Assembly: GCF_947568905.1 (NCBI RefSeq)
Contig: NC_079170.1
Location: 4,402,001-4,466,000, forward strand
Direction: 5' to 3'
Source: Ostrea edulis
Lineage: Eukaryota
DNA: 64,000 nucleotides
The notes below the pieces were generated by a model, which saw only the letters and a list, made by a program, of their open reading frames with translations, made no database searches and had not been told where the DNA came from. The position numbers were made by a program, and so were the translations under genes. Positions 3,922-63,391 of this stretch are shown here, one piece after another (positions within the stretch are counted from its first letter, which is position 1; every line of letters begins with the position of its first letter).

Positions 3922-4710
3922 ATACCGAGCCAAGCTGGGACGGGCCGAAGGCCCGTCCGCGAAGCAAGGCTCTAAAGGTAACACGTATGTAAAAGAAAAA
4001 AGTCAAAATCAGCAAAAGAAAAAGAGATAATCTCTATATACGTTCACTGAAATTTTCGTGATCCATATGGGCGCCGCCATTTATTTTTTTATTACCTGCT
4101 TCAACAGTTATTCGTGTTTTATTTTGAATGCCAATACTAGAAGACTCTAACGTGCAATTCGTAATTTAAACACTCATTTTGTTCAAAGTGAATAGTATAA
4201 TTATCATTGTAACATGTTTTAGCAAATAAATACATATAAAACTGTAATACGACTAAATAGATGAACGAGTTCATGAGTTTCTTTGAATAAGAGTATACGA
4301 TAAAATTACGGTTACTTTTTTTACCATTTTGAATTTATTGGTTAATTTTGTTTAGTTTTAACAGCCTTTTTCATTGCATACGGAATGTATTATTGTTGTT
4401 TTTAATTATTTGCTTTGAAAAAGAGAAAAAAGTCGAGGCTAAATGTGACGTCACAATGCACAGTTTACGCCGCCTTGCGTTTTATTTCCCGCGTTCAATG
4501 AATAGGCGGATCATGTAAAACTGTTGTCCCCATATAAACTCCTTTAATATTGAGATGTTACTGGGTGTTTAGGGCAAGGAAATTTCATTCAAAATATATA
4601 TTTTTAAATCAATCATAATCTACCGTACTTAACGGAATTATGATTACCACTCGGGACACGGAGTTACGTACATGCTTCGCTCGGTCCAACGGTCACACCG
4701 TATACATATT
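3922..4710 (+). mobile_element. Non-autonomous Helentron-like element, copy 2
   Basis: Co-linear, diverged copy of 3018-3809 with the same termini (3' subTIR at 4675-4685 plus hairpin). Separated from copy 1 by a 112-bp unique spacer. Confidence 0.8.
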
Positions 4711-7227
4711 ATTCATGTTGTACACATATACACTTGTTTATATTCATGTTGTACACATATACACTTGTTTATATTCATGTTGTACATACACACTTGTTTA
4801 TATTCATGTTGTACACATATACACTTCTTTATATTCATGTTGTACACATACACTTGTTTATATTCATGTTTTACACATATACACTTGTTTATAATCATGT
4901 ACACATATACACTTGTTTATATTCATGTACACATATACACTTGTTTATATTCATGTTATACACATATACACTTGTTTATATTCATGTACACATATACACT
5001 TGTTTATATTCATGTTGTACACATATACACTTGTTTATATTCATGTACACATATACAATTGTATATATTCATGTTGTACACACATACAATTGTTTATATT
5101 CATGTTGTACATATACATTTGTTTATATTCATGTTGTACACATATACACTTGTTTATATTCATGTTGTACACATATACACTTGTTTATATTCATGTTGTA
5201 CACATATACACTTGTTTATATTCATGTTGTACACATATACAATTGTTTATTTTCATGTTGTACACATACACTTGTTTATATTCATGTTGTACACATATAC
5301 AATTGTTTATATTCATGTTGTACACATATACACTTGTTTATATTCATGTTGTACACATATACACTTGTTTATATTCATGTTGTACACATACACACTTGTT
5401 TATATTCATCTTGTACACATATACACTTGTTTATATTCATGTTGTACACATATACACTTGTTTATATTCATGTTGTACATATACACTTGTTTATATTCAT
5501 GTTGTACACATACGTACTTGTTTATATTCATGTTGTACACATACATACTTGTTTATATTCATGTTGTACATATATACACTTGTTTATATTCATGTTGTAC
5601 ACATATACACTTGTTTATATTCATGTTGTACAGATACATACTTGTTTATATTCATGTTGTACAGATACATACTTGTTTATATTCATGTTGTACACATATG
5701 CACTTGTTTATATTCATGTTGTACACATATACACTTGTTTATATTCATGTTGTACACATATACACTTGTTTATATTCATGTTGTACACATACACACTTGT
5801 TTATATTCATGTTGTACACATATACACTTGTTTATATTCATGTTGTACACATATACACTTGTTTATATTCATGTTGTACACATATACACTTGTTTATATT
5901 CATGTTGTACACATACATACTTGTTTATATTCATGTTGTACACATATACACTTGTTTATATTCATGTTGTACACATACACACTTGTTTATATTCATGTTG
6001 TACACATATACACTTGTTTATATTCATGTTGTACACATATACACTTGTTTATATTCATGTTGTACACATATACACTTGTTTATATTCATGTTGTACACAT
6101 ATACACTTGTTTATATTCATGTTGTACACATATACACTTGTTTATATTCATGTTATACATATACATACTTGTTTATATTCATGTTGTACATATACATACT
6201 TGTTTATATTCATGTTGTACATATATACACTTGTTTATATTCATGTTGTACACATATACACTTGTTTATATTCATGTTGTACACATATACACTTGTTTAT
6301 ATTCATGTTGTACACATATACACTTGTTTATATTCATGTTGTACACATATACACTTGTTTATATTCATGTTGTACACATACACACTTGTTTATATTCATG
6401 TTGTACATATACACTTGTTTATATTCATGTTGTACACATATACACTTGTTTATATTCATGTTGTACATATACACTTGTTTATATTCATGTTGTACACATA
6501 TACACTTGTTTATATTCATGTTGTACACATACACACTTGTTTATATTCATGTTGTACATATACACTTGTTTATATTCATGTTGTACATATACACTTGTTT
6601 ATATTCATGTTATACACATATACACTTGTTTATATTCATGTTGTACATATACACTTGTTTATATTCATGTTGTACACATATACACTTGTTTATATTCATG
6701 TTGTACACATATACACTTGTTTATATTCATGTTGTACATATACACTTGTTTATATTGGTGTTGTACACATATACACTTGTTTATATTCATGTTGTACATA
6801 TACACTTGTTTATATTCATGTTGTACACATATACACTTGTTTATATTCATGTTGTACACATACATACTTGTTTATATTCATGTTGTACACATATACACTT
6901 GTTTATATTCATGTTGTACACATATACACTTGTTTATATTCATGTTGTACACATACATACTTGTTTATATTCATGTTGTACATATATACACTTGTTTATA
7001 TTCATGTTGTACACATATACACTTGTTTATATTCATGTTGTACATATACACTTGTTTATATTCATGTTGTACACATATACACTTGTTTATATTCATGTTG
7101 TACACATATACACTTGTTTATATTCATGTTGTACACATATACACTTGTTTATATTCATGTTGTACACATATACAATTGTTTATATTCATGTTGTACACAT
7201 ACACACTTGTTTATATTCTTGTTGTAC
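4711..7227. repeat. 31-bp tandem satellite, array 2
   Basis: Same unit as array 1; resumes directly after HINE copy 2. Confidence 0.98.
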
Positions 7228-7607: not shown

Positions 7608-7757
7608 NNNNNNNNNNNNNNNNNNNNNNNNNNNNNNNNNNNNNNNNNNNNNNNNNNNNNNNNNNNNNNNNNNNNNNNNNNNNNNNNNNNNNNNNNNNNN
7701 NNNNNNNNNNNNNNNNNNNNNNNNNNNNNNNNNNNNNNNNNNNNNNNNNNNNNNNNN
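7608..7757. other. Assembly gap (150 N)
   Basis: Run of N. Confidence 1.
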
Positions 7758-8895: not shown

Positions 8896-9196
8896 ATGTA
8901 AAACTTAAAAATCGGAAATAACAATGACGTTTTAGAGCTACTATAGGCAAAAACAGTGTGCCAAAAGAGTGGAGTCAAATTCGTTGAAGGATAAGAGCTA
9001 TGCGTGAGGGAGATAATCCTTAATTTTGAAATGAATTTCTAAATGTTATAACAGCAATTAAATATACATCCGTATGTTCAAGCTAGTAACGAAGTACTTA
9101 GCTACTGGGCTGTAGAGACCCTCGGGGACTAACAGTTCACCATCAGAGGCCTCGACCCAGGGGTCATAATGTAAAACTTATACGGTACCAATTTAA
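8896..9196 (-). mobile_element. Retrozyme-family repeat fragment lacking the ribozyme core
   Basis: Reverse complement of the 13184-13853 monomer. The segment holding the hammerhead is deleted at one end and not reached at the other. Confidence 0.85.
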
Positions 9197-9602: not shown

Positions 9603-10949
9603 GTGGTAACCACAACACTGCTCGTATTAGTAAGCTCTGGAGATAGAGAGGTTTCTGCCGATTGTCCTTTGCCGTTACCCTGCGAGTGTAATGGAAATCA
9701 ACAGATAGTATATTGTAGCAACAAAAACCTATCCTCACTCCCACCCATTCAAAAGTGTGAAGGACAATGGACGTTTTTTCTAGATGGTAATGGGATTGAG
9801 ACAATATCTGATCATTATTTTTATGGTGTCGCGGTCAATTTTCTTAGTTTAGAAAACAATGCGATTCACTTGATCGGTGAAAATGCTTTCAATGGGAGCG
9901 AGGACACATTAAATTATTTTCATCTTGAAAACAACAAACTGTCAGAGTTACCAGTCGCGATTGGAAAGCTTCGGCAATTAACTGCCATTTCTATTCAGGG
10001 GAATCCCCTGACTGATTTGTCAGAGAGTGTGGTGAAAAATTTATCCTCTTCCCTTCAGTTGATTAGTTTGGGGTCCAAGTCCATGACAAGATGGCCAAAG
10101 AACATGGACCTTCTCCCAAATTTATTTTCAATTGATTTATATGACGTACAATTTCCAGAGCTCCCCGACGATGCATTTTCCTTGTACCACAAGAATCTGA
10201 CATTTCTTAACTTTTACAATACTGGGTTAACAAAACTACCAACCTCCATCAATGACTGCAGGAAAATTTCTACGATGACATTTCAAAGAAATAAGAAATT
10301 GTCAGCTAATGCCATTACGGAATCTGTTACCCATGGTTTCCCCTACCTAACATCGATAACATTCCAGGACAACGGGTTAACAACTCTTCCATCCATCTTT
10401 TCAAAATCAAATCACATAGGAAGAATTTCTGTTGATAATGAGCCAATAGAATATCTTCGCGGTGACACCTTTCCGCCCCACTTGAGCAATTATTTGCACT
10501 ATCTGCCAATCAATGGCACACAACTTACCCACGTGCCTCCAGTTTTGTCAAACTTAGACTCCCTAACAAGCCTAGTCATCACCAGCAGCCAGATTTCTGA
10601 GATTCAATACGAGGATTGCAATAAACTGTTTAACATAGGAACACTTTTCCTGAGTTATAACCCGTTGTCTCAGATCTCTGAAAATGCGTTTCTTAACAAT
10701 AAACAACTTGGTTTCATAGTTTTGGATCACACCAATCTAACGTCAGTTCCAAAAGCACTTCTGAAAGCAGAGTCGCTACAAACTGTGGATATGACGTCAT
10801 GTCCGGTGGAATGCTCCTGCACGAATCTTGACTGGATGAAGTCGTGGAAGTCCATCCCTACATTTTATGGAACATGCATTAATCTGAATGGGACAAGTTT
10901 AATGAGCTACATACAGAAAGAAATTCCGCATTGCCCAGATAGCATTTAA
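9603..10949 (+). CDS. Secreted leucine-rich repeat protein, large terminal exon (start exon upstream, not located)
   Basis: 448-codon ORF: hydrophobic N-terminal remnant, LRRNT (CPLPCECNG..VYCSNKNLSSLP), many LxxLxLxxNxL repeats, LRRCT (CPVECSC..C), no TM segment. A splice acceptor TACTTTCAG ends at 9602, so the GTG is probably not the true start. Confidence 0.9.
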   Translation: MVTTTLLVLVSSGDREVSADCPLPLPCECNGNQQIVYCSNKNLSSLPPIQKCEGQWTFFLDGNGIETISDHYFYGVAVNFLSLENNAIHLIGENAFNGSEDTLNYFHLENNKLSELPVAIGKLRQLTAISIQGNPLTDLSESVVKNLSSSLQLISLGSKSMTRWPKNMDLLPNLFSIDLYDVQFPELPDDAFSLYHKNLTFLNFYNTGLTKLPTSINDCRKISTMTFQRNKKLSANAITESVTHGFPYLTSITFQDNGLTTLPSIFSKSNHIGRISVDNEPIEYLRGDTFPPHLSNYLHYLPINGTQLTHVPPVLSNLDSLTSLVITSSQISEIQYEDCNKLFNIGTLFLSYNPLSQISENAFLNNKQLGFIVLDHTNLTSVPKALLKAESLQTVDMTSCPVECSCTNLDWMKSWKSIPTFYGTCINLNGTSLMSYIQKEIPHCPDSI

Positions 10950-11182
10950 ATCTCTTTTATCATTTTCTACATAATTCGCAGGGAACTTTGTAATTTCCAA
11001 TGAATCTATAAAGAATGCGAGACAGAGAATTCTGGTACATGTTTTGAATGCATCCTCATCTACAAACTGTTCTTTACATTTCATGTACACTTATCAGATT
11101 TAGTATGTTATGCATTGTTTGAAATCTTTATCATGATATCGTATATATATATATATATGAAGAAGAGGCAATACTTAGAACT

Positions 11183-11398
11183 AGATAGCATGCCTAGGTG
11201 TCTAGTAAGAGGACAGACGAACCTATTTATATATGATTCATTATATATTACCCGATACAAAGTAGATTTAGAGTAGAGCATGCCTAGGTGTCTAGTAAGA
11301 GGACAGATGAACCTATTTATATATTATTCATTATATATTACCCGATACAAAGTAGATTTAGAGTAGAGCATGCCTAGGTGTCTAGTAAGAGGACAGAT
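11183..11398. repeat. 90-bp tandem repeat, about 2.4 copies
   Basis: AGCATGCCTAGGTGTCTAGTAAGAGGACAG recurs at 11187, 11277 and 11367. Confidence 0.9.
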
Positions 11399-11523
11399 GC
11401 ATTAATAAATCAGGTTTGAAATGATTTATCTGACAATTCTTTGACTTCTATCGATATTCTGGAGTTTAATCACCTACTTCCAGTCGTACTGAGTTTAGCC
11501 TTGTCTGATACACTATGTTTTAT

Positions 11524-11693
11524 ATGTAAAACTTATTCGGTACCAATTTTGATGCACCAGATGCGCATTTCGACAAATAATGTCTCTTCAGTGATGCTCA
11601 ACCGAAATGTTTGAAATCCGAAATAACTATGAAGCTTTAGAGCTAAATATAGCCAAAAACAGCGTGCCAAAAAAGTGGAGACAAATTCGTCCA
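11524..11693 (-). mobile_element. Retrozyme-family fragment with intact hammerhead
   Basis: Reverse complement of part of the 351-bp monomer; shares the AAGTTTTACAT terminus. Confidence 0.88.
11554..11597 (-). ncRNA. Minimal type I hammerhead ribozyme
   Basis: Minus strand reads GCATCA-CTGAAGA-GACA(ttatt)TGTC-GAAA-TGCGCA-TC-TGGTGC. Confidence 0.85.
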
Positions 11694-13454
11694 ATATCAT
11701 GTTTTGAAATAAATATAATATTAAGTAATTACTATAATGATGATATATTTTATTTTAGTTTTTATTATTTTCCTTCTTCTATTTTAGCGAAGTCAAACTA
11801 TTCATTATAACGACTATATACTTCGTGAGACGTCACTTTAAACAAGACTGTCAAGACTCCTGTAACATCAACGAATTTTTCAATACCTGCGCCGGTATAG
11901 AAGTTGATCATACGCCACACATGTTCTTGCATACCAAATAAATTAAGAAACATAAGTACCATATATAAATTTGATAAAGATGGCTGACAGTGTACCTAGC
12001 ACATTCACATCTGGATTTGAAAGTACATATTTTTAAATATAGATAATTGGTTTATTGGTAAGATGATAATTGCGATAGCTGTATTTTTCAAACCGTACCG
12101 ACATTTTTGATCAGCTTATGGTTTTTATGCTTTTTACCCCGTATTGGAAAGAGAGAAAACAAACAAGAGAAAACGAAAAATTTAAACATCCCCCCTGTCT
12201 CCATTTCTTTTATGAATGGATAAAGGATCTGTAAGTCAGATGTCCCTTTCAATAGGCCTCGGGTCGCTGTTTTCTATCAACATGCATGTTTAAATTTACA
12301 TCCTTGGTTATCTGCTATAGAAGGTTTTCAAGAAGAGGTTACTTCTGTGGTTCAGTAAAGAATTAGAACAAAAAGAAATATTTCTACTCATATTTTTATT
12401 CATTATCTCATTTGTGTTTATGTATTTTTGTTTTGGGTTCAGAGAGCCTCTTAAATTTTCTTCTTTATTGGAACAATTGTTTGAAAATGAAATGTTTCAC
12501 AAATTGTTAATTACTGGCCCCAGTTTGAAATTATGGTTATGAATTGTTGAAATAAATGAAATGTCACGAGAATGGAAAAAAAACAGGTTTCTATTGATGA
12601 CATAAACGTATGTTTTCGCCCATCTGATTAACGTTAGCTAATATCACGCATTGCTTTTAAAATATTAGATTTCTGCATTATTTTACGTATACATCCATGT
12701 TTTTATTTACACATTGAATGCGTTTTATGCTGTATATCCAACGCTATGTCTATTTTTGCCTTTTTTAAAAATCAATATTGGTTCTGAATAAAAATGATAT
12801 CCGCCTTTCCTCACCTGAAGTCCATGTCCTATCATTAATCGGCCCTGATGACATCTCAAAGAATCGACGTGACAGAAAGCAAGCGAAGGCTAGCATTATC
12901 CCGAGGTTTAGATAAATTATCTCTAATACGTGAAACAATTACAATCATTTCCTTTCACTGATCCGCGCCCGGTTTTTTTGTTTTTTGTTTTTTTTTTCCT
13001 TACATGGAAATTATATTAGACACAGTGTAATATTAGAAATGCGTTTTAATTACAAATATCTATGATCTAACATTTGTACCATCTAAAATATACAACAGCC
13101 GGGTAAAATATATTGTCTTCATATATATATACAATATCATGATAAAGATTTTAAACAATGTATAACATACTAAATCTGATATGCCCTGGGTCGAGGCCTC
13201 TGCTGGTGGACTGTTAGTCCCCGAGGGTCTCTACAGCCCAGTAGCTAAGTACTTCGTTACTAGCTTGAAAATACGGATGTATATTTAATTGCTGTTATAA
13301 AATTTAGAAATTCATTTCAAAATTAAGGATTATCTCCCTCATGCATAGCTCTTATCCTTGGACGAATTTGGCTCCACTTTTTTGGCACACTGTTTTTGGC
13401 TATATTTAGCTCTAAAACTTCATAGTTATTTCGGATTTCAAACATTTCGGTTGA

Positions 13455-13498
13455 GCATCACTGAAGAGACATAATTTGTCGAAATGCGCATCTGGTGC
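13455..13498 (+). ncRNA. Minimal type I hammerhead ribozyme
   Basis: Stem I GCATCA/TGGTGC, core CTGAAGA (13461-13467), stem II GACA/TGTC, GAAA (13481-13484), palindromic stem III TGCGCA. Predicted cleavage after C13492. Confidence 0.88.
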
Positions 13499-13780
13499 AT
13501 CAAAATTGGTACCGTACAAGTTTTACATTATGACCCCTGGGTCGAGGCCTCTGCTGGTGGACTGTTGGTCCCCGAGGGTCTCTACAGCCCAGTTGCTAAG
13601 TACTTCGTTACTAGCTTGAAAATACGGATGTATATTTAATTGCTGTTATAAAATTTAGAAATTCATTTCAAAATTAAGGATTATCTCCCTCATGCATAGC
13701 TCTTATCCTTGGACGAATTTGGCTCCACTTTTTTGGCACGCTGTTTTTGGCTATATTTAGCTCTAAAACTTCATAGTTGA

Positions 13781-13824
13781 GCATCACTGAAGAGACATTT
13801 TTTGTCGAAATGCGCATCTGGTGC
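13781..13824 (+). ncRNA. Minimal type I hammerhead ribozyme
   Basis: Same core and stems as 13455-13498. Predicted cleavage after C13818. Confidence 0.88.
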
Positions 13825-14697
13825 ATCAAAATTGGTACCGTATAAGTTTTACATATATGATCTAACATTTGTACCATCTAAAATATACAACAGCCGGGTA
13901 AAATATAATGTCACATTCACCACCGTGTTGGCCTTTACTTTGACGAGTTACTGTATATATTTCAATATTACTTATTTCACGATTATGTATTGCTGTTGTG
14001 TGATGAAACTTCACGTCATCAATTATTTTGTAATTAAAGGAAAAATTAAAACTGAGACTGACTCTAGAAATTCGGACCGTCAGCATTTACTGTTTTGATT
14101 CGCATAAACACCGAGGGTTGGGCCCATATGTTTACATAGTGGTAGAAATTTCTAGCTTAATTGATAATTTAAGGCATTAATATATAATTTGTTTGTATAA
14201 TGGGGGCATGAAGACCTATCCTCATTAACAAAAACTTTATATTTTCCCGTATTTGTAATTTTCACATTTTCTATATGTAAAGTTGAAAAGATCACTCTCG
14301 AGTTACTGCTTGATATTAACAGTTATAAATGTCAAGGGTTTTATTATGTCAAAATAACATCCATCGACATCACTTCCGTGCACAGACCAGCTGATCGACA
14401 TGACAATTCAACGAAAGACAACTCGTATACTACTCGTAATTTACAACTAACTGGTCAGGTATTGCATTGAAAAAATAACATTTTGTGAATATTTTATTTT
14501 GTCGTTTTATCGTCCATTGTTTCTGAAATAGACAAAGATTTTGCATTGGTCCATTTCAGAGAGGGAAAGAAAAACCTGCATTGAAATATTATTTGTATAC
14601 ATAATCAAGGACGCACTAGACGTTTCTGACATTATCCCTGAAGTTATTGATATGGAGACTTCTTGTATGATTTTAAACATTGATTCACGTTTTTTAT

Positions 14698-26254: not shown

Positions 26255-26444
26255 NNNNNNNNNNNNNNNNNNNNNNNNNNNNNNNNNNNNNNNNNNNNNN
26301 NNNNNNNNNNNNNNNNNNNNNNNNNNNNNNNNNNNNNNNNNNNNNNNNNNNNNNNNNNNNNNNNNNNNNNNNNNNNNNNNNNNNNNNNNNNNNNNNNNNN
26401 NNNNNNNNNNNNNNNNNNNNNNNNNNNNNNNNNNNNNNNNNNNN
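26255..26444. other. Assembly gap (190 N)
   Basis: Run of N. Confidence 1.
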
Positions 26445-63036: not shown

Positions 63037-63391
63037 TGTAATGGTTTGGGCCGTGGATATCGGCCTGGATAGCTCAGTCAGTAGAGCACCTGACTAGTGA
63101 TGCAGGGGTCCCGGGTTCGATTTCCGGTCCTGCCATACATTTTCTCATTTCCTGTTACAGATTTGGTGCCGTTGACCACCCCTGGACTTGGAGGTGAAAG
63201 TCCTCCCAGGGACAAATAAGAACTTGGGTTGCATCTTCGAGGGCGAAGACAATTTAAGGAGGGAGGAATGTAATGGTTCTGGCCGTGGATATCGGCCTGG
63301 GTAGCTCAGTCGGTAGAGCACCTGACTAGTGATGCAGGGGTCCCGGGTTCAATTCCCGGTCCAGCCATACATTTTCTCCTTTCCTGTTACA
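63037..63391 (+). mobile_element. TRIM with tRNA-derived LTRs (Helenus/TRIMp3 type)
   Basis: 123-bp LTRs at 63037-63159 and 63269-63391 (TGTAA..TTACA), each with A/B boxes. PBS-like TGGTGCCGT (63164), PPT AAGGAGGGAGGAA (63256-63268), 4-bp TSD TATA. Confidence 0.9.

What the first reader, a model, noticed from the sequence alone, without database searches (positions are those of the whole stretch)
13184..13853. Tandem hammerhead-ribozyme retrozyme predicted to release a 326-nt RNA that could circularise
Seen: two 351-bp-period units, each with stem I GCATCA/TGGTGC, CTGAAGA, stem II, GAAA, palindromic TGCGCA and a UC cleavage site. The predicted cuts at 13492 and 13818 are 326 nt apart because of a 25-bp deletion. 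Established: minimal type I hammerheads in tandem repeats of this size define metazoan non-LTR retrozymes, reported in mussels to yield abundant circRNA and thought to use Penelope-like RT. Inference: this is an oyster-type member, and this locus would give a short size variant. The class is known; whether this locus is described is unknown to me.
Basis: partly seen in the sequence, partly recalled or inferred. Interest (0 to 1): 0.8.

Follow-up and report, generated by a model that had tools for sequence, protein, structure and literature searches.

The report
Tandem hammerhead retrozyme copy, bivalve genome
This is a two-unit copy of a small non-coding jumping element whose RNA carries self-cutting hammerhead motifs. 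The kind is already known from mussels, corals and salamanders, and this genome holds thousands of copies, so the locus is a well-documented example and not a new kind of thing.

Summary
Window 13184-13854 holds two head-to-tail units, 351 nt and a 25-nt-deleted unit. Each carries a complete type I hammerhead (13455-13498 and 13781-13824). Rfam Hammerhead_1 scores them 32.1 and 31.2 bits, just under the 34-bit cut-off, with local E about 5e-7. Cuts after C13492 and C13818 would free 326 nt.

The repeat is a young dispersed family:
- The 895-Mb genome has 8,154 exact hammerhead cores.
- Copies are 97-99% alike.
- All share one sharp 3' end, 36 nt past the cleavage site, and have scattered 5' truncation points.

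Older paralogues keep the empty site. This copy is therefore an insertion (13118-13852), with a 57-60-bp target duplication and a 66-bp filler copied, inverted, from 2 kb upstream. These are marks of target-primed reverse transcription, as in Penelope-like elements, which abound here. I file it as a new member of the known metazoan non-LTR retrozymes.

Not shown: cleavage, circles, or any RNA from this locus. RNA libraries hold the family only as contigs. The two units belong to different subfamilies, so this copy was probably not rolled off one monomer circle. The scan has flagged the same family at two other places in this genome.

The parts
13058..13117 (+). Upstream copy of the target-site duplication. 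It is 57 bp for certain (13061-13117); the first 2-3 bases are ambiguous with the element's end.
   Evidence: The direct repeat with 13853-13912 matches at 58 of 60 positions. It is present once in the empty-site paralogues L074:4683-4742 and L075:4752-4811.
13118..13183 (+). 66-bp filler at the 5' junction. It is an inverted copy of host DNA from about 2 kb upstream (11092-11152), joined by 2-3 nt of microhomology at each end.
   Evidence: Inverted repeat 11092-11152 / 13121-13181 is 95% complementary. The source sequence, but not the filler, is present in the empty-site paralogues.
11092..11152 (-). Source of the filler. It lies about 150 bp downstream of the LRR ORF.
13184..13534 (+). Retrozyme unit 1: full-length type, 351 nt, non-coding, 39% GC.
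13455..13498 (+). Hammerhead 1 (type I). The predicted cut is after C13492. Loop 2 is UAAUU, against UUAUU in most copies.
   Evidence: Rfam RF00163 32.1 bits, full model, all pairs standard. Variant table.
13535..13854 (+). Retrozyme unit 2: 25-nt-deletion subfamily. It ends at the family's common 3' terminus ...GTTTTACAT.
13781..13824 (+). Hammerhead 2 (type I). The predicted cut is after C13818. Loop 2 is UUUUU.
   Evidence: Rfam RF00163 31.2 bits
13493..13818 (+). The 326-nt RNA that double cleavage of a transcript of this locus would release. This is predicted, not observed.
   Evidence: Positions read. Circular fold -69.0 kcal/mol, z = +0.24 against shuffles. No RNA contig spans the deletion junction.
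13853..13912 (+). Downstream copy of the target-site duplication.
11524..11694 (-). Separate 5'-truncated solo copy of the same family (unit positions 175-345), with an intact hammerhead core at 11560-11591.
8909..9194 (-). Third copy of the family. An internal deletion has removed the hammerhead, and the canonical 3' end is kept.
   Evidence: Its deletion junction is found only in the chromosome-7 paralogues, not at unlinked loci.

Best explanation
The locus is one insertion (window 13118-13852) of a young, very abundant, non-coding retroelement of the metazoan non-LTR retrozyme kind. It comprises 1.9 tandem units, each with an intact type I hammerhead ribozyme.

Shown here:
- The insertion is real. 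Empty sites survive in older paralogues.
- It carries a 57-60-bp target-site duplication and a 66-bp filler copied in inverted orientation from 2 kb upstream.
- All sampled copies of the family share one 3' terminus, 36 nt downstream of the cleavage site. Their 5' ends are scattered along the unit, and they are partial tandems of 1 to 3.5 units. This is the footprint of target-primed reverse transcription starting at a fixed 3' site.

Inferred from the literature on the class:
- A transcript that spans both hammerheads folds into a 'double hammerhead', with the two palindromic ATGCGCAT segments pairing with each other.
- A host RtcB-type tRNA ligase closes this RNA into a circle.
- The reverse transcriptase and GIY-YIG endonuclease of a resident Penelope-like element copy such RNAs back into the genome.

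My odds:
- About 0.9 that this is a true member of the class, inserted by reverse transcription.
- About 0.7 that the hammerheads cut in a dimeric transcript.
- About 0.3 that this particular locus is expressed and yields 326-nt circles.
For: - Hammerheads: complete core and three helices at both sites; Rfam Hammerhead_1 32.1 and 31.2 bits over the whole model.
- Dimer fold: two hammerhead segments co-fold into the double-hammerhead at -30.3 kcal/mol, against -9.6 and -10.3 for the separate monomers.
- Family size: 8,154 exact cores against 0 for the reversed control. The full unit gave at least 1,431 first-look candidates, and the scored copies are 97-99% identical.
- Ends: 26 independent loci end at unit position 344-351 (mode 345). 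Their 5' starts are spread over the unit, and lengths run from 0.99 to 3.54 units.
- Empty site: L074 and L075 carry one copy of the 60-bp target and no element. The filler origin is shown.
- Units within one insertion share 42% of their private variants. Units at different loci share 6.9%.
- Partner enzymes: the genome holds at least 1,102 GIY-YIG candidates, including apparently open 787- and 973-aa ORFs with RT followed by C-terminal GIY-YIG.
- PLE hallmarks (5' truncation, partial tandems, variable-length target duplications, odd junction tails) are described in PMC8557442.
- Class definition, mussel data and RtcB circularisation are in PMC7229834.
- RNA libraries from three studies hold the family. 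One 283-nt contig crosses a unit junction, and contigs at depth 5-21 run into other loci's flanks.
- In a related organism's run, the hammerhead-plus-tail segment has the highest depth and shows no listed difference, while the body differs at many positions.
Against: - Both Rfam scores are under the 34-bit gathering score.
- As a lone monomer the canonical hammerhead fold (-5.2 kcal/mol) loses to other folds (-9.6).
- The circular 326- and 351-nt monomers are no more stable than shuffled sequence (z +0.24 and -0.26). This differs from the 'highly self-paired' circles reported for the class.
- There is no covariation support. Copies are too alike, and the one older copy seen (L031, 84% identical) simply has decayed stems.
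- RNA evidence is contigs only, so it shows no ends, no strand and no circles. Nothing is specific to this locus or to the 326-nt variant.
- No resident Penelope-like element with a matching 3' tail or hammerhead was found.
- A clear target duplication was seen at only 3 of 26 loci.
- The two units belong to different subfamilies, which a rolling copy of one monomer circle does not predict.
Confidence: 0.85

Rival explanations
1. Same element, different template. The cDNAs that integrate are made from uncleaved linear multimeric transcripts, or by the enzyme jumping from one RNA to another (the habit that gives Penelope-like elements their partial tandems). They are not made by rolling round a hammerhead-processed monomer circle. 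The hammerhead-plus-tail module would then serve mainly as the 3' recognition and start site for the reverse transcriptase.
For: The common 3' end lies 36 nt downstream of the cleavage site, not at it. The window's array joins a full-length-type unit to a deletion-type unit, and the deletion type exists independently at unlinked loci. Partial tandems are a general property of PLE insertions, even in PLEs without hammerheads (PMC8557442). A minimal hammerhead about 45 nt upstream of an element-like terminus is also seen beside a PLE fragment in L043.
Against: Units inside one insertion share private variants six times more often than units of different loci. This fits one small template copied repeatedly. 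Circles are the dominant RNA form in the mussel (PMC7229834). An internal start on a circle would also give a fixed 3' end. The window's mixed dimer could be a later gain or a conversion.
Confidence: 0.3
2. This particular locus is a silent fossil. The family is or was active, but the copy at 13184-13854 is never transcribed across both hammerheads, so no 326-nt RNA arises here.
For: No RNA-library contig carries this locus's flanks or bridges its deletion junction. One X1 contig ends exactly at the junction, as a full-length-type RNA would. The element has no recognisable promoter of its own, and the locus lies in intergenic, repeat-rich DNA downstream of an LRR gene. About 8,000 sister copies compete as sources.
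Against: Both hammerheads are intact. Only about one locus in nine has a pair of intact cores, so this is among the copies that could release a monomer. Contigs drop rare variants, so their absence proves little.
Confidence: 0.6
3. The element is a SINE-like retroposon moved by a LINE-type enzyme, not a Penelope-like one. The hammerhead would be a passenger.
For: A fixed 3' end with 5' truncation is also the LINE/SINE pattern. No PLE with a shared tail was found.
Against: There is no poly(A) or microsatellite tail. A 57-60-bp target duplication, and many copies without one, fit the variable second-strand cut of the PLE GIY-YIG nuclease better than LINE endonucleases (PMC8557442). Partial tandems are typical of PLEs. 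Retrozymes and PLEs co-occur in 32 of 35 species, and their sequences are related in Xenopus (preprint 10.64898/2026.07.22.740005).
Confidence: 0.08
4. The repeat is an ordinary satellite spread by DNA-level processes (unequal crossing-over, segmental duplication, rolling-circle DNA transposons), and the hammerhead-like motif is a chance or dead feature.
For: The locus itself was copied at least four times by segmental duplication on this chromosome, and its array size changed between copies.
Against: There are thousands of dispersed short copies on all large contigs, with different flanks. An empty site with a target duplication exists. The ends show no Helitron-type features. No arrays longer than two cores occur among the first 100 places. 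The motif matches the whole Rfam model with E about 5e-7.
Confidence: 0.02

Closest known systems
Non-LTR retrozymes of the mussel Mytilus galloprovincialis (Cervera and de la Pena 2020, PMC7229834)
   Same: Both hosts are bivalves. Type I hammerheads lie in non-coding AT-rich tandem repeats of about 350-390 bp. There are thousands of motifs (about 5,000 there, 8,154 exact cores here). Helix III is short, and few of the classical loop 1-loop 2 contacts are present. PLEs are in the same genome.
   Different: Sequence relatedness could not be tested, because no mussel sequence is held in the paper's text or supplement. Here the copies are mostly solo or 1-3.5 units, not long arrays. No northern, cleavage or circle data exist for this family. 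The predicted circles are not unusually stable.
Amphibian satellite 2 / axolotl retrozymes (HHR_Amex1/2)
   Same: Units are 330 and 350 nt, so size variants coexist. The weak helix III has a palindromic tetraloop, so the ribozyme works best as a dimer. Monomer and multimer RNAs are both seen.
   Different: The hosts are vertebrates, with up to 126,000 motifs in long tandem arrays. This family's helix III has two pairs (the invertebrate type), which in mussel and coral allows some monomeric cleavage.
[quoted passage not shown] 2021, PMC8557442)
   Same: The hammerhead lies a few tens of nt upstream of the element's 3' end. Both show 5' truncation, partial tandems, variable target duplications and odd junction sequences. 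The CUGAAGA core variant also occurs in an HHR-bearing terminus next to a PLE fragment here (L043).
   Different: PLEs encode RT and a GIY-YIG endonuclease. This element encodes nothing. No sequence similarity to the two PLE families examined here was found.
Plant LTR retrozymes (Cervera et al. 2016, PMC4918200)
   Same: Both are non-autonomous elements with two hammerheads that bracket an RNA which circularises. Both depend on another element's RT.
   Different: The plant elements have type III hammerheads inside about 350-bp LTRs, a tRNA-Met primer binding site, a polypurine tract, 4-bp target duplications, high GC and Ty3/Gypsy helpers. None of these features is present here.
Schistosoma Sm-alpha / W-element repeats with type I hammerheads (PMC8490949 lists them)
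   Same: They are SINE-like, about 330-nt tandem or dispersed units carrying an active type I hammerhead. The Rfam Hammerhead_1 model is built in part on such sequences (my recollection).
   Different: The phylum and the sequences are different. I made no comparison here.

Membership tests
Metazoan non-LTR retrozyme (Cervera and de la Pena 2020) | Type I hammerhead with complete catalytic core and helices I-III | tested here: met
   The parts CUGAAGA, G10.1-C11.1, GAAA, A15.1-U16.1 and C17 are all present. Helices have 6, 4 and 2 (+GCGC loop) pairs. The full-model Rfam alignment has no non-standard pair.
Metazoan non-LTR retrozyme (Cervera and de la Pena 2020) | Motif embedded in short (150-450 bp) head-to-tail repeats of low GC, from dimers upward | tested here: met
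   Units are 351 and 326 nt with 39-40% GC. Other loci hold 1-3.5 units.
Metazoan non-LTR retrozyme (Cervera and de la Pena 2020) | No LTRs, PBS, PPT or coding capacity | tested here: met
   No ORF lying within the element exceeds 67 aa. The flanking repeat is host target DNA, not an LTR. No tRNA-like part was found. PBS and PPT were not searched for specifically.
Metazoan non-LTR retrozyme (Cervera and de la Pena 2020) | Many dispersed genomic copies; target duplications, when present, longer than 4 bp | tested here: met
   There are 8,154 exact cores on all large contigs. The duplication here is 57-60 bp, L020 has 9-13 bp, and most loci have none detectable.
Metazoan non-LTR retrozyme (Cervera and de la Pena 2020) | Hammerhead self-cleaves (alone or as a dimer) | not testable with these tools
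   Only a thermodynamic prediction is available: the double-hammerhead dimer folds at -30.3 kcal/mol against -19.9 for two monomers.
Metazoan non-LTR retrozyme (Cervera and de la Pena 2020) | Expressed as abundant unit-length linear and circular RNA | tested here: inconclusive
   The family is present in RNA libraries of three studies, but only as assembled contigs. No ends, strand or circularity can be read, and nothing is specific to this locus.
Metazoan non-LTR retrozyme (Cervera and de la Pena 2020) | Co-occurrence with autonomous Penelope-like elements | tested here: met
   There are at least 1,102 GIY-YIG candidates. ORFs of 787 and 973 aa carry RVT_1 followed by C-terminal GIY-YIG.
Rfam Hammerhead_1 (RF00163) | Score at or above the curated gathering score (34 bits) | tested here: not met
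   Scores are 32.1 and 31.2 bits. The cut-off is an operational threshold. The shortfall comes from stem and loop sequence, not from any core position.
Non-autonomous partner of a specific Penelope-like element (SINE/LINE-like pairing, as shown for Xenopus in preprint 10.64898/2026.07.22.740005) | Sequence shared between the retrozyme and the pLTR or 3' end of a resident PLE | tested here: inconclusive
   No similarity was found to 30 GIY-YIG loci or to two PLE families (L070/L072, L071). Only a small sample of the PLEs could be examined, and the family's own copies saturate any DNA search.

The most novel reading that the evidence does not exclude
The genomic footprint suggests that integration does not start from the hammerhead-made ends. 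Reverse transcription always begins 36 nt downstream of the cleavage or ligation site. This insertion also joins units of two different subfamilies. If that holds genome-wide, the hammerhead-plus-tail module would be the enzyme's 3' recognition and start site. Tandem copies could then arise by template jumping between RNAs as well as by rolling on a circle. That would revise the accepted life-cycle model of animal retrozymes and tie them mechanistically to the partial-tandem habit of Penelope-like elements.
Probability: 0.2. Interest if true: 0.6.

Novelty: new member of a known kind. Interest (0 to 1): 0.4.

Why it matters
Animal retrozymes were defined in 2020 from a coral, a mussel and a salamander. 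How they are copied back into DNA, and by which enzyme, is still inferred. The 2020 review states that the repeats show no motif pointing to the helper element (PMC7761336). The 2026 preprint on their Penelope-like origin covers mainly vertebrates and calls for work on the mobilisation mechanism.

This family offers clean material for that question:
- About 8,000 very young copies.
- A sharply defined 3' start site 36 nt past the cleavage site.
- Scattered 5' truncation points.
- At this locus, a preserved empty site with a 57-60-bp target duplication and a templated filler.

For the genome's annotation, the family is a major interspersed repeat that standard Rfam scanning misses, because it scores 2-3 bits under the threshold.

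Tried and rejected
- Whole-window Rfam scan at gathering scores: only two tRNAs. The 1-kb scan at E<=10 found no hammerhead, because filters dropped it. It was found only in 66-nt scans.
- Genome search with RF00163: only 73 of 85,583 candidates were scored and it missed the family, so it is uninformative.
- Tandem Repeats Finder did not report the 351-nt period.
- Single-strand folds of the 56-nt hammerhead segments are not better than shuffles (z -0.5 and -0.7). Circular folds of the 326- and 351-nt monomers are also no better than shuffles. The first attempt at that fold timed out.
- Covariation: the 76 hammerhead instances differ only by scattered single changes, and the older copy L031 is decayed. 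No structural support could be obtained this way.
- Search for the helper element:
  - The retrozyme has no similarity to 30 GIY-YIG loci or to the PLE families in L070/L072 and L071.
  - The copy 1.2 kb downstream of the L071 PLE is a separate insertion, because that PLE family ends at L071 about 5505-5535.
  - An HHR-like core in that PLE's 3' UTR (L071 5433-5475) lacks a canonical helix III and cleavage site, and Rfam does not recognise it.
  - The L043 hammerhead terminus shares only the core.
- I considered that the 326-nt variant arose at this locus and seeded the other deletion-type copies. I rejected this, because those copies have the family's usual loop 2 (TTATT), not this locus's TTTTT.
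- I considered that the hammerhead-less copy at 8909-9194 had spread. I rejected this, because its junction occurs only in the local paralogues.
- tRNA-like origin: none found. The bacterial-type promoter/terminator scan is irrelevant for an animal genome and was at shuffle level.
- The supplement of PMC7229834 holds no mussel sequence to compare.
- A majority-rule profile of the units was computed inside one script, only to count shared variants. It is not reported or used further.
Full report
**What is there.** Two direct repeats are in register. Segments 13184-13427 and 13535-13778 are 351 nt apart and 99% identical. Segments 13450-13528 and 13776-13854 are 326 nt apart and 96% identical. 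A pairwise alignment shows that the second unit lacks 25 nt just upstream of its hammerhead and differs at six further positions.

Each unit carries these parts in order: GCATCA, CTGAAGA, a 4-pair stem II with a 5-nt loop, GAAA, the palindrome ATGCGCAT whose last T is followed by C, and TGGTGC. This is the order of a type I hammerhead. The cleavage-site C falls at 13492 and 13818, 326 nt apart.

**Is it a hammerhead?** The Rfam Hammerhead_1 model aligns from its first to its last position with no non-standard pair. It scores 32.1 bits (E 4.7e-7 for that 66-nt search) and 31.2 bits. The curated cut-off is 34 bits. The whole-window scan therefore listed only two tRNAs, and a 1-kb scan lost the match to the speed filters. 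All invariant core positions are present. Scaled to the window, the E-value is about 5e-4 (my inference).

Helix III can form only two pairs around a GCGC loop within one molecule. The canonical monomer fold is worth -5.2 kcal/mol, against -9.6 for the best alternative. Two copies co-fold at -30.3 kcal/mol into the classical double hammerhead: the two ATGCGCAT segments pair with each other and each stem I forms in trans. Such helix III forms and dimer-dependent cleavage are described for animal retrozymes. The mussel ribozyme cuts at about 0.1 per minute, and RtcB ligase circularises the product (PMC7229834).

There is no covariation support. The 76 hammerhead instances I collected differ by scattered single changes only, and 43 are identical. 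One older copy (84% identical) simply has broken stems.

**The family.** The genome is 895 Mb in 52 contigs, ten of them chromosome-sized. The unit gave at least 1,431 first-look candidates, and the scored ones are 97-99% identical. An exact pattern of the core (27 fixed bases, loop 2 free) occurs 4,139 + 4,015 times. The reversed control occurs 0 times. Among the first 100 places, about 80 are solo, nine are pairs 345-353 nt apart and one is a pair 174 nt apart. About one locus in nine therefore has two intact cores.

In 26 independent loci, every insertion ends at the same place...GTTTTACAT. This is unit position 344-351 (mode 345), 36 nt downstream of the cleavage site. The 5' ends fall anywhere along the unit, and lengths run from 0.99 to 3.54 units. 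That sample was chosen by full-length matches, so it is biased towards copies of at least one unit.

Units within one insertion share 42% of their private variants, against 6.9% for units at different loci. This fits repeated copying of one small template followed by decay. The element has no ORF of its own above 67 aa, no tRNA-like part, and 39-40% GC.

**This copy is an insertion, and its junctions can be read.** The surrounding region belongs to a segmentally duplicated cluster on the same chromosome.

Two older paralogues (L074 and L075, 85-93% identical in the flanks) run straight from the sequence left of 13117 into the sequence right of 13853. They hold a single copy of the 60-bp stretch that flanks the element in the window. 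The insertion is therefore 13118-13852, with a 57-60-bp target-site duplication.

Between the upstream duplicate and the first unit lie 66 bp that do not belong to the family. They are a 95% inverted copy of window 11092-11152, about 2 kb upstream. That source is present in the empty-site paralogues only at its own place. Both filler junctions show 2-3 nt of microhomology (read directly).

A long and variable target duplication, 5' truncation, partial tandems and odd junction sequences are the published hallmarks of Penelope-like elements. Their GIY-YIG nuclease makes the second-strand cut at a variable distance (PMC8557442). Elsewhere in the family I found a clear duplication only at L020 (9-13 bp) and a long flanking repeat at L015. 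Most loci show none.

**Later history of the locus.** Three young paralogues on the same chromosome (about 0.1, 0.4 and 1.0 Mb from the window's locus; 3' flanks 99.5-99.8% identical) carry the same target duplication and filler. They hold only one unit, of the deleted type. Four shared derived flank sites place the window inside that group. Either the dimer collapsed to a monomer at least twice, or the window gained its full-length unit once. I cannot decide between these.

The 25-nt deletion is not private. Ungapped matches to its junction occur at unlinked loci on three other contigs, as 5'-truncated single copies. Those copies carry the family's usual loop 2, not the window's UUUUU, so they do not descend from this locus. 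The window's array thus joins a full-length-type unit to a deletion-type unit. A rolling copy of one monomer circle does not predict this. A mixed dimeric RNA, a jump between two RNAs, or a later gain would.

**Helper enzyme.** The genome is rich in Penelope-like elements. There are at least 1,102 GIY-YIG candidates, and open frames of 787 and 973 aa carry a reverse transcriptase followed by a C-terminal GIY-YIG domain. I found no element that shares sequence with the retrozyme:
- The 30 best GIY-YIG loci and two PLE families show nothing beyond separate retrozyme insertions nearby.
- One PLE family has a hammerhead-like core about 60 nt from its 3' end, but without a canonical helix III or cleavage site. 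Rfam does not recognise it.
- A canonical minimal hammerhead about 45 nt from an element-like terminus lies next to a PLE fragment in L043, but it shares only the core.

The pairing with a PLE therefore rests on the footprint and on the literature. That literature includes the 2026 preprint, which finds retrozymes related to PLE pseudo-LTRs in Xenopus and states that non-vertebrates were not examined.

**RNA.** Seven runs on record as RNA hold part of the element, and I laid three of them, from three studies. All are served as assembled contigs, which cannot show ends, strand, level or circularity.
- In one small mollusc-labelled library, the hammerhead and tail segments reach word depth 100-230.
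- A 283-nt contig crosses a unit junction.
- Contigs at depth 5-21 run from the element into flanks of other loci, so some copies sit in expressed RNA.
- No contig carries this locus's flanks. One contig stops exactly at the deletion junction, as a full-length-type RNA would.
- In a run of a related organism, the hammerhead-plus-tail segment has the highest depth and no listed difference, while the body differs at many sites. This suggests constraint on that module.

The circular monomers are predicted to be no more stable than shuffles.

**Comparison and verdict.** By anatomy, copy number and footprint this is a member of the metazoan non-LTR retrozymes. Its closest relative in kind is the mussel family of 350-390-bp repeats with about 5,000 hammerheads (PMC7229834). 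I found no paper on such elements in oysters in the held library. The scan's own notes flag the same family at two other places in this genome.

The class is known, so the finding is a new member of it and not a new kind. What this locus adds is a preserved empty site, a long target duplication, a templated inverted filler, and a start site fixed 36 nt past the cleavage site. Cleavage, circles and expression of the 326-nt form remain predictions.

The two N runs in the window (7608-7757 and 26255-26444) were left alone.

Noticed in passing
window 4710-7227: A 31-bp satellite array of 82.5 copies, 94% matching. It leaves all three + frames open for about 2.5 kb, giving spurious ORFs of 776-852 aa with no Pfam hit.
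   Followed up: partly
window 9603-10949 (+): A single-exon 448-aa ORF with LRRNT and several LRR_8 repeats. It is a host leucine-rich-repeat gene inside a segmentally duplicated cluster on this chromosome. At least seven related segments lie between about 3.94 and 5.43 Mb of contig C7.
   Followed up: partly
window 11187-11399; L073 2146-2988: A 90-bp tandem repeat has 2.4 copies in the window but about nine in the paralogue L073, so the array size varies between duplicates.
   Followed up: no
window 8909-9194 (-) and 11524-11694 (-): Two further insertions of the same retrozyme family lie within 5 kb. One has its hammerhead deleted, and that junction occurs only in the local paralogues. The other is a 5'-truncated solo copy with an intact core at 11560-11591.
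   Followed up: yes
L043 (G000 C9:52624592-52627843), minus strand, about 2660-2870: A canonical minimal hammerhead (CUGAAGA core, GCGC helix III loop) lies in a perfect-looking inverted-repeat structure. It abuts (CA)n/(TA)n microsatellites and sits upstream of a 5'-truncated Penelope-like ORF. This resembles the inverted-terminus arrangement described for PLEs.
   Followed up: partly
L070 (G000 C1:110499000-110508999) and neighbours: Head-to-tail array of a Penelope-like element with a 3,717-bp period and open 787-aa RT + GIY-YIG frames. Many copies genome-wide have identical domain scores, often as inverted pairs, so this looks like a very young family. No canonical hammerhead was found in it.
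   Followed up: partly
window 63063-63135 and 63295-63367 (+): Two tRNA-model matches lie 232 nt apart (39.5 and 48.8 bits) with near-identical sequence. They are either a tandem tRNA gene pair or tRNA-derived repeats.
   Followed up: no
L015 (G000 C7:76785060-76788409): A retrozyme insertion is flanked by a direct repeat of about 170 bp or more (31 bp from each end). This is either a very long duplication or an insertion into a pre-existing tandem repeat.
   Followed up: no
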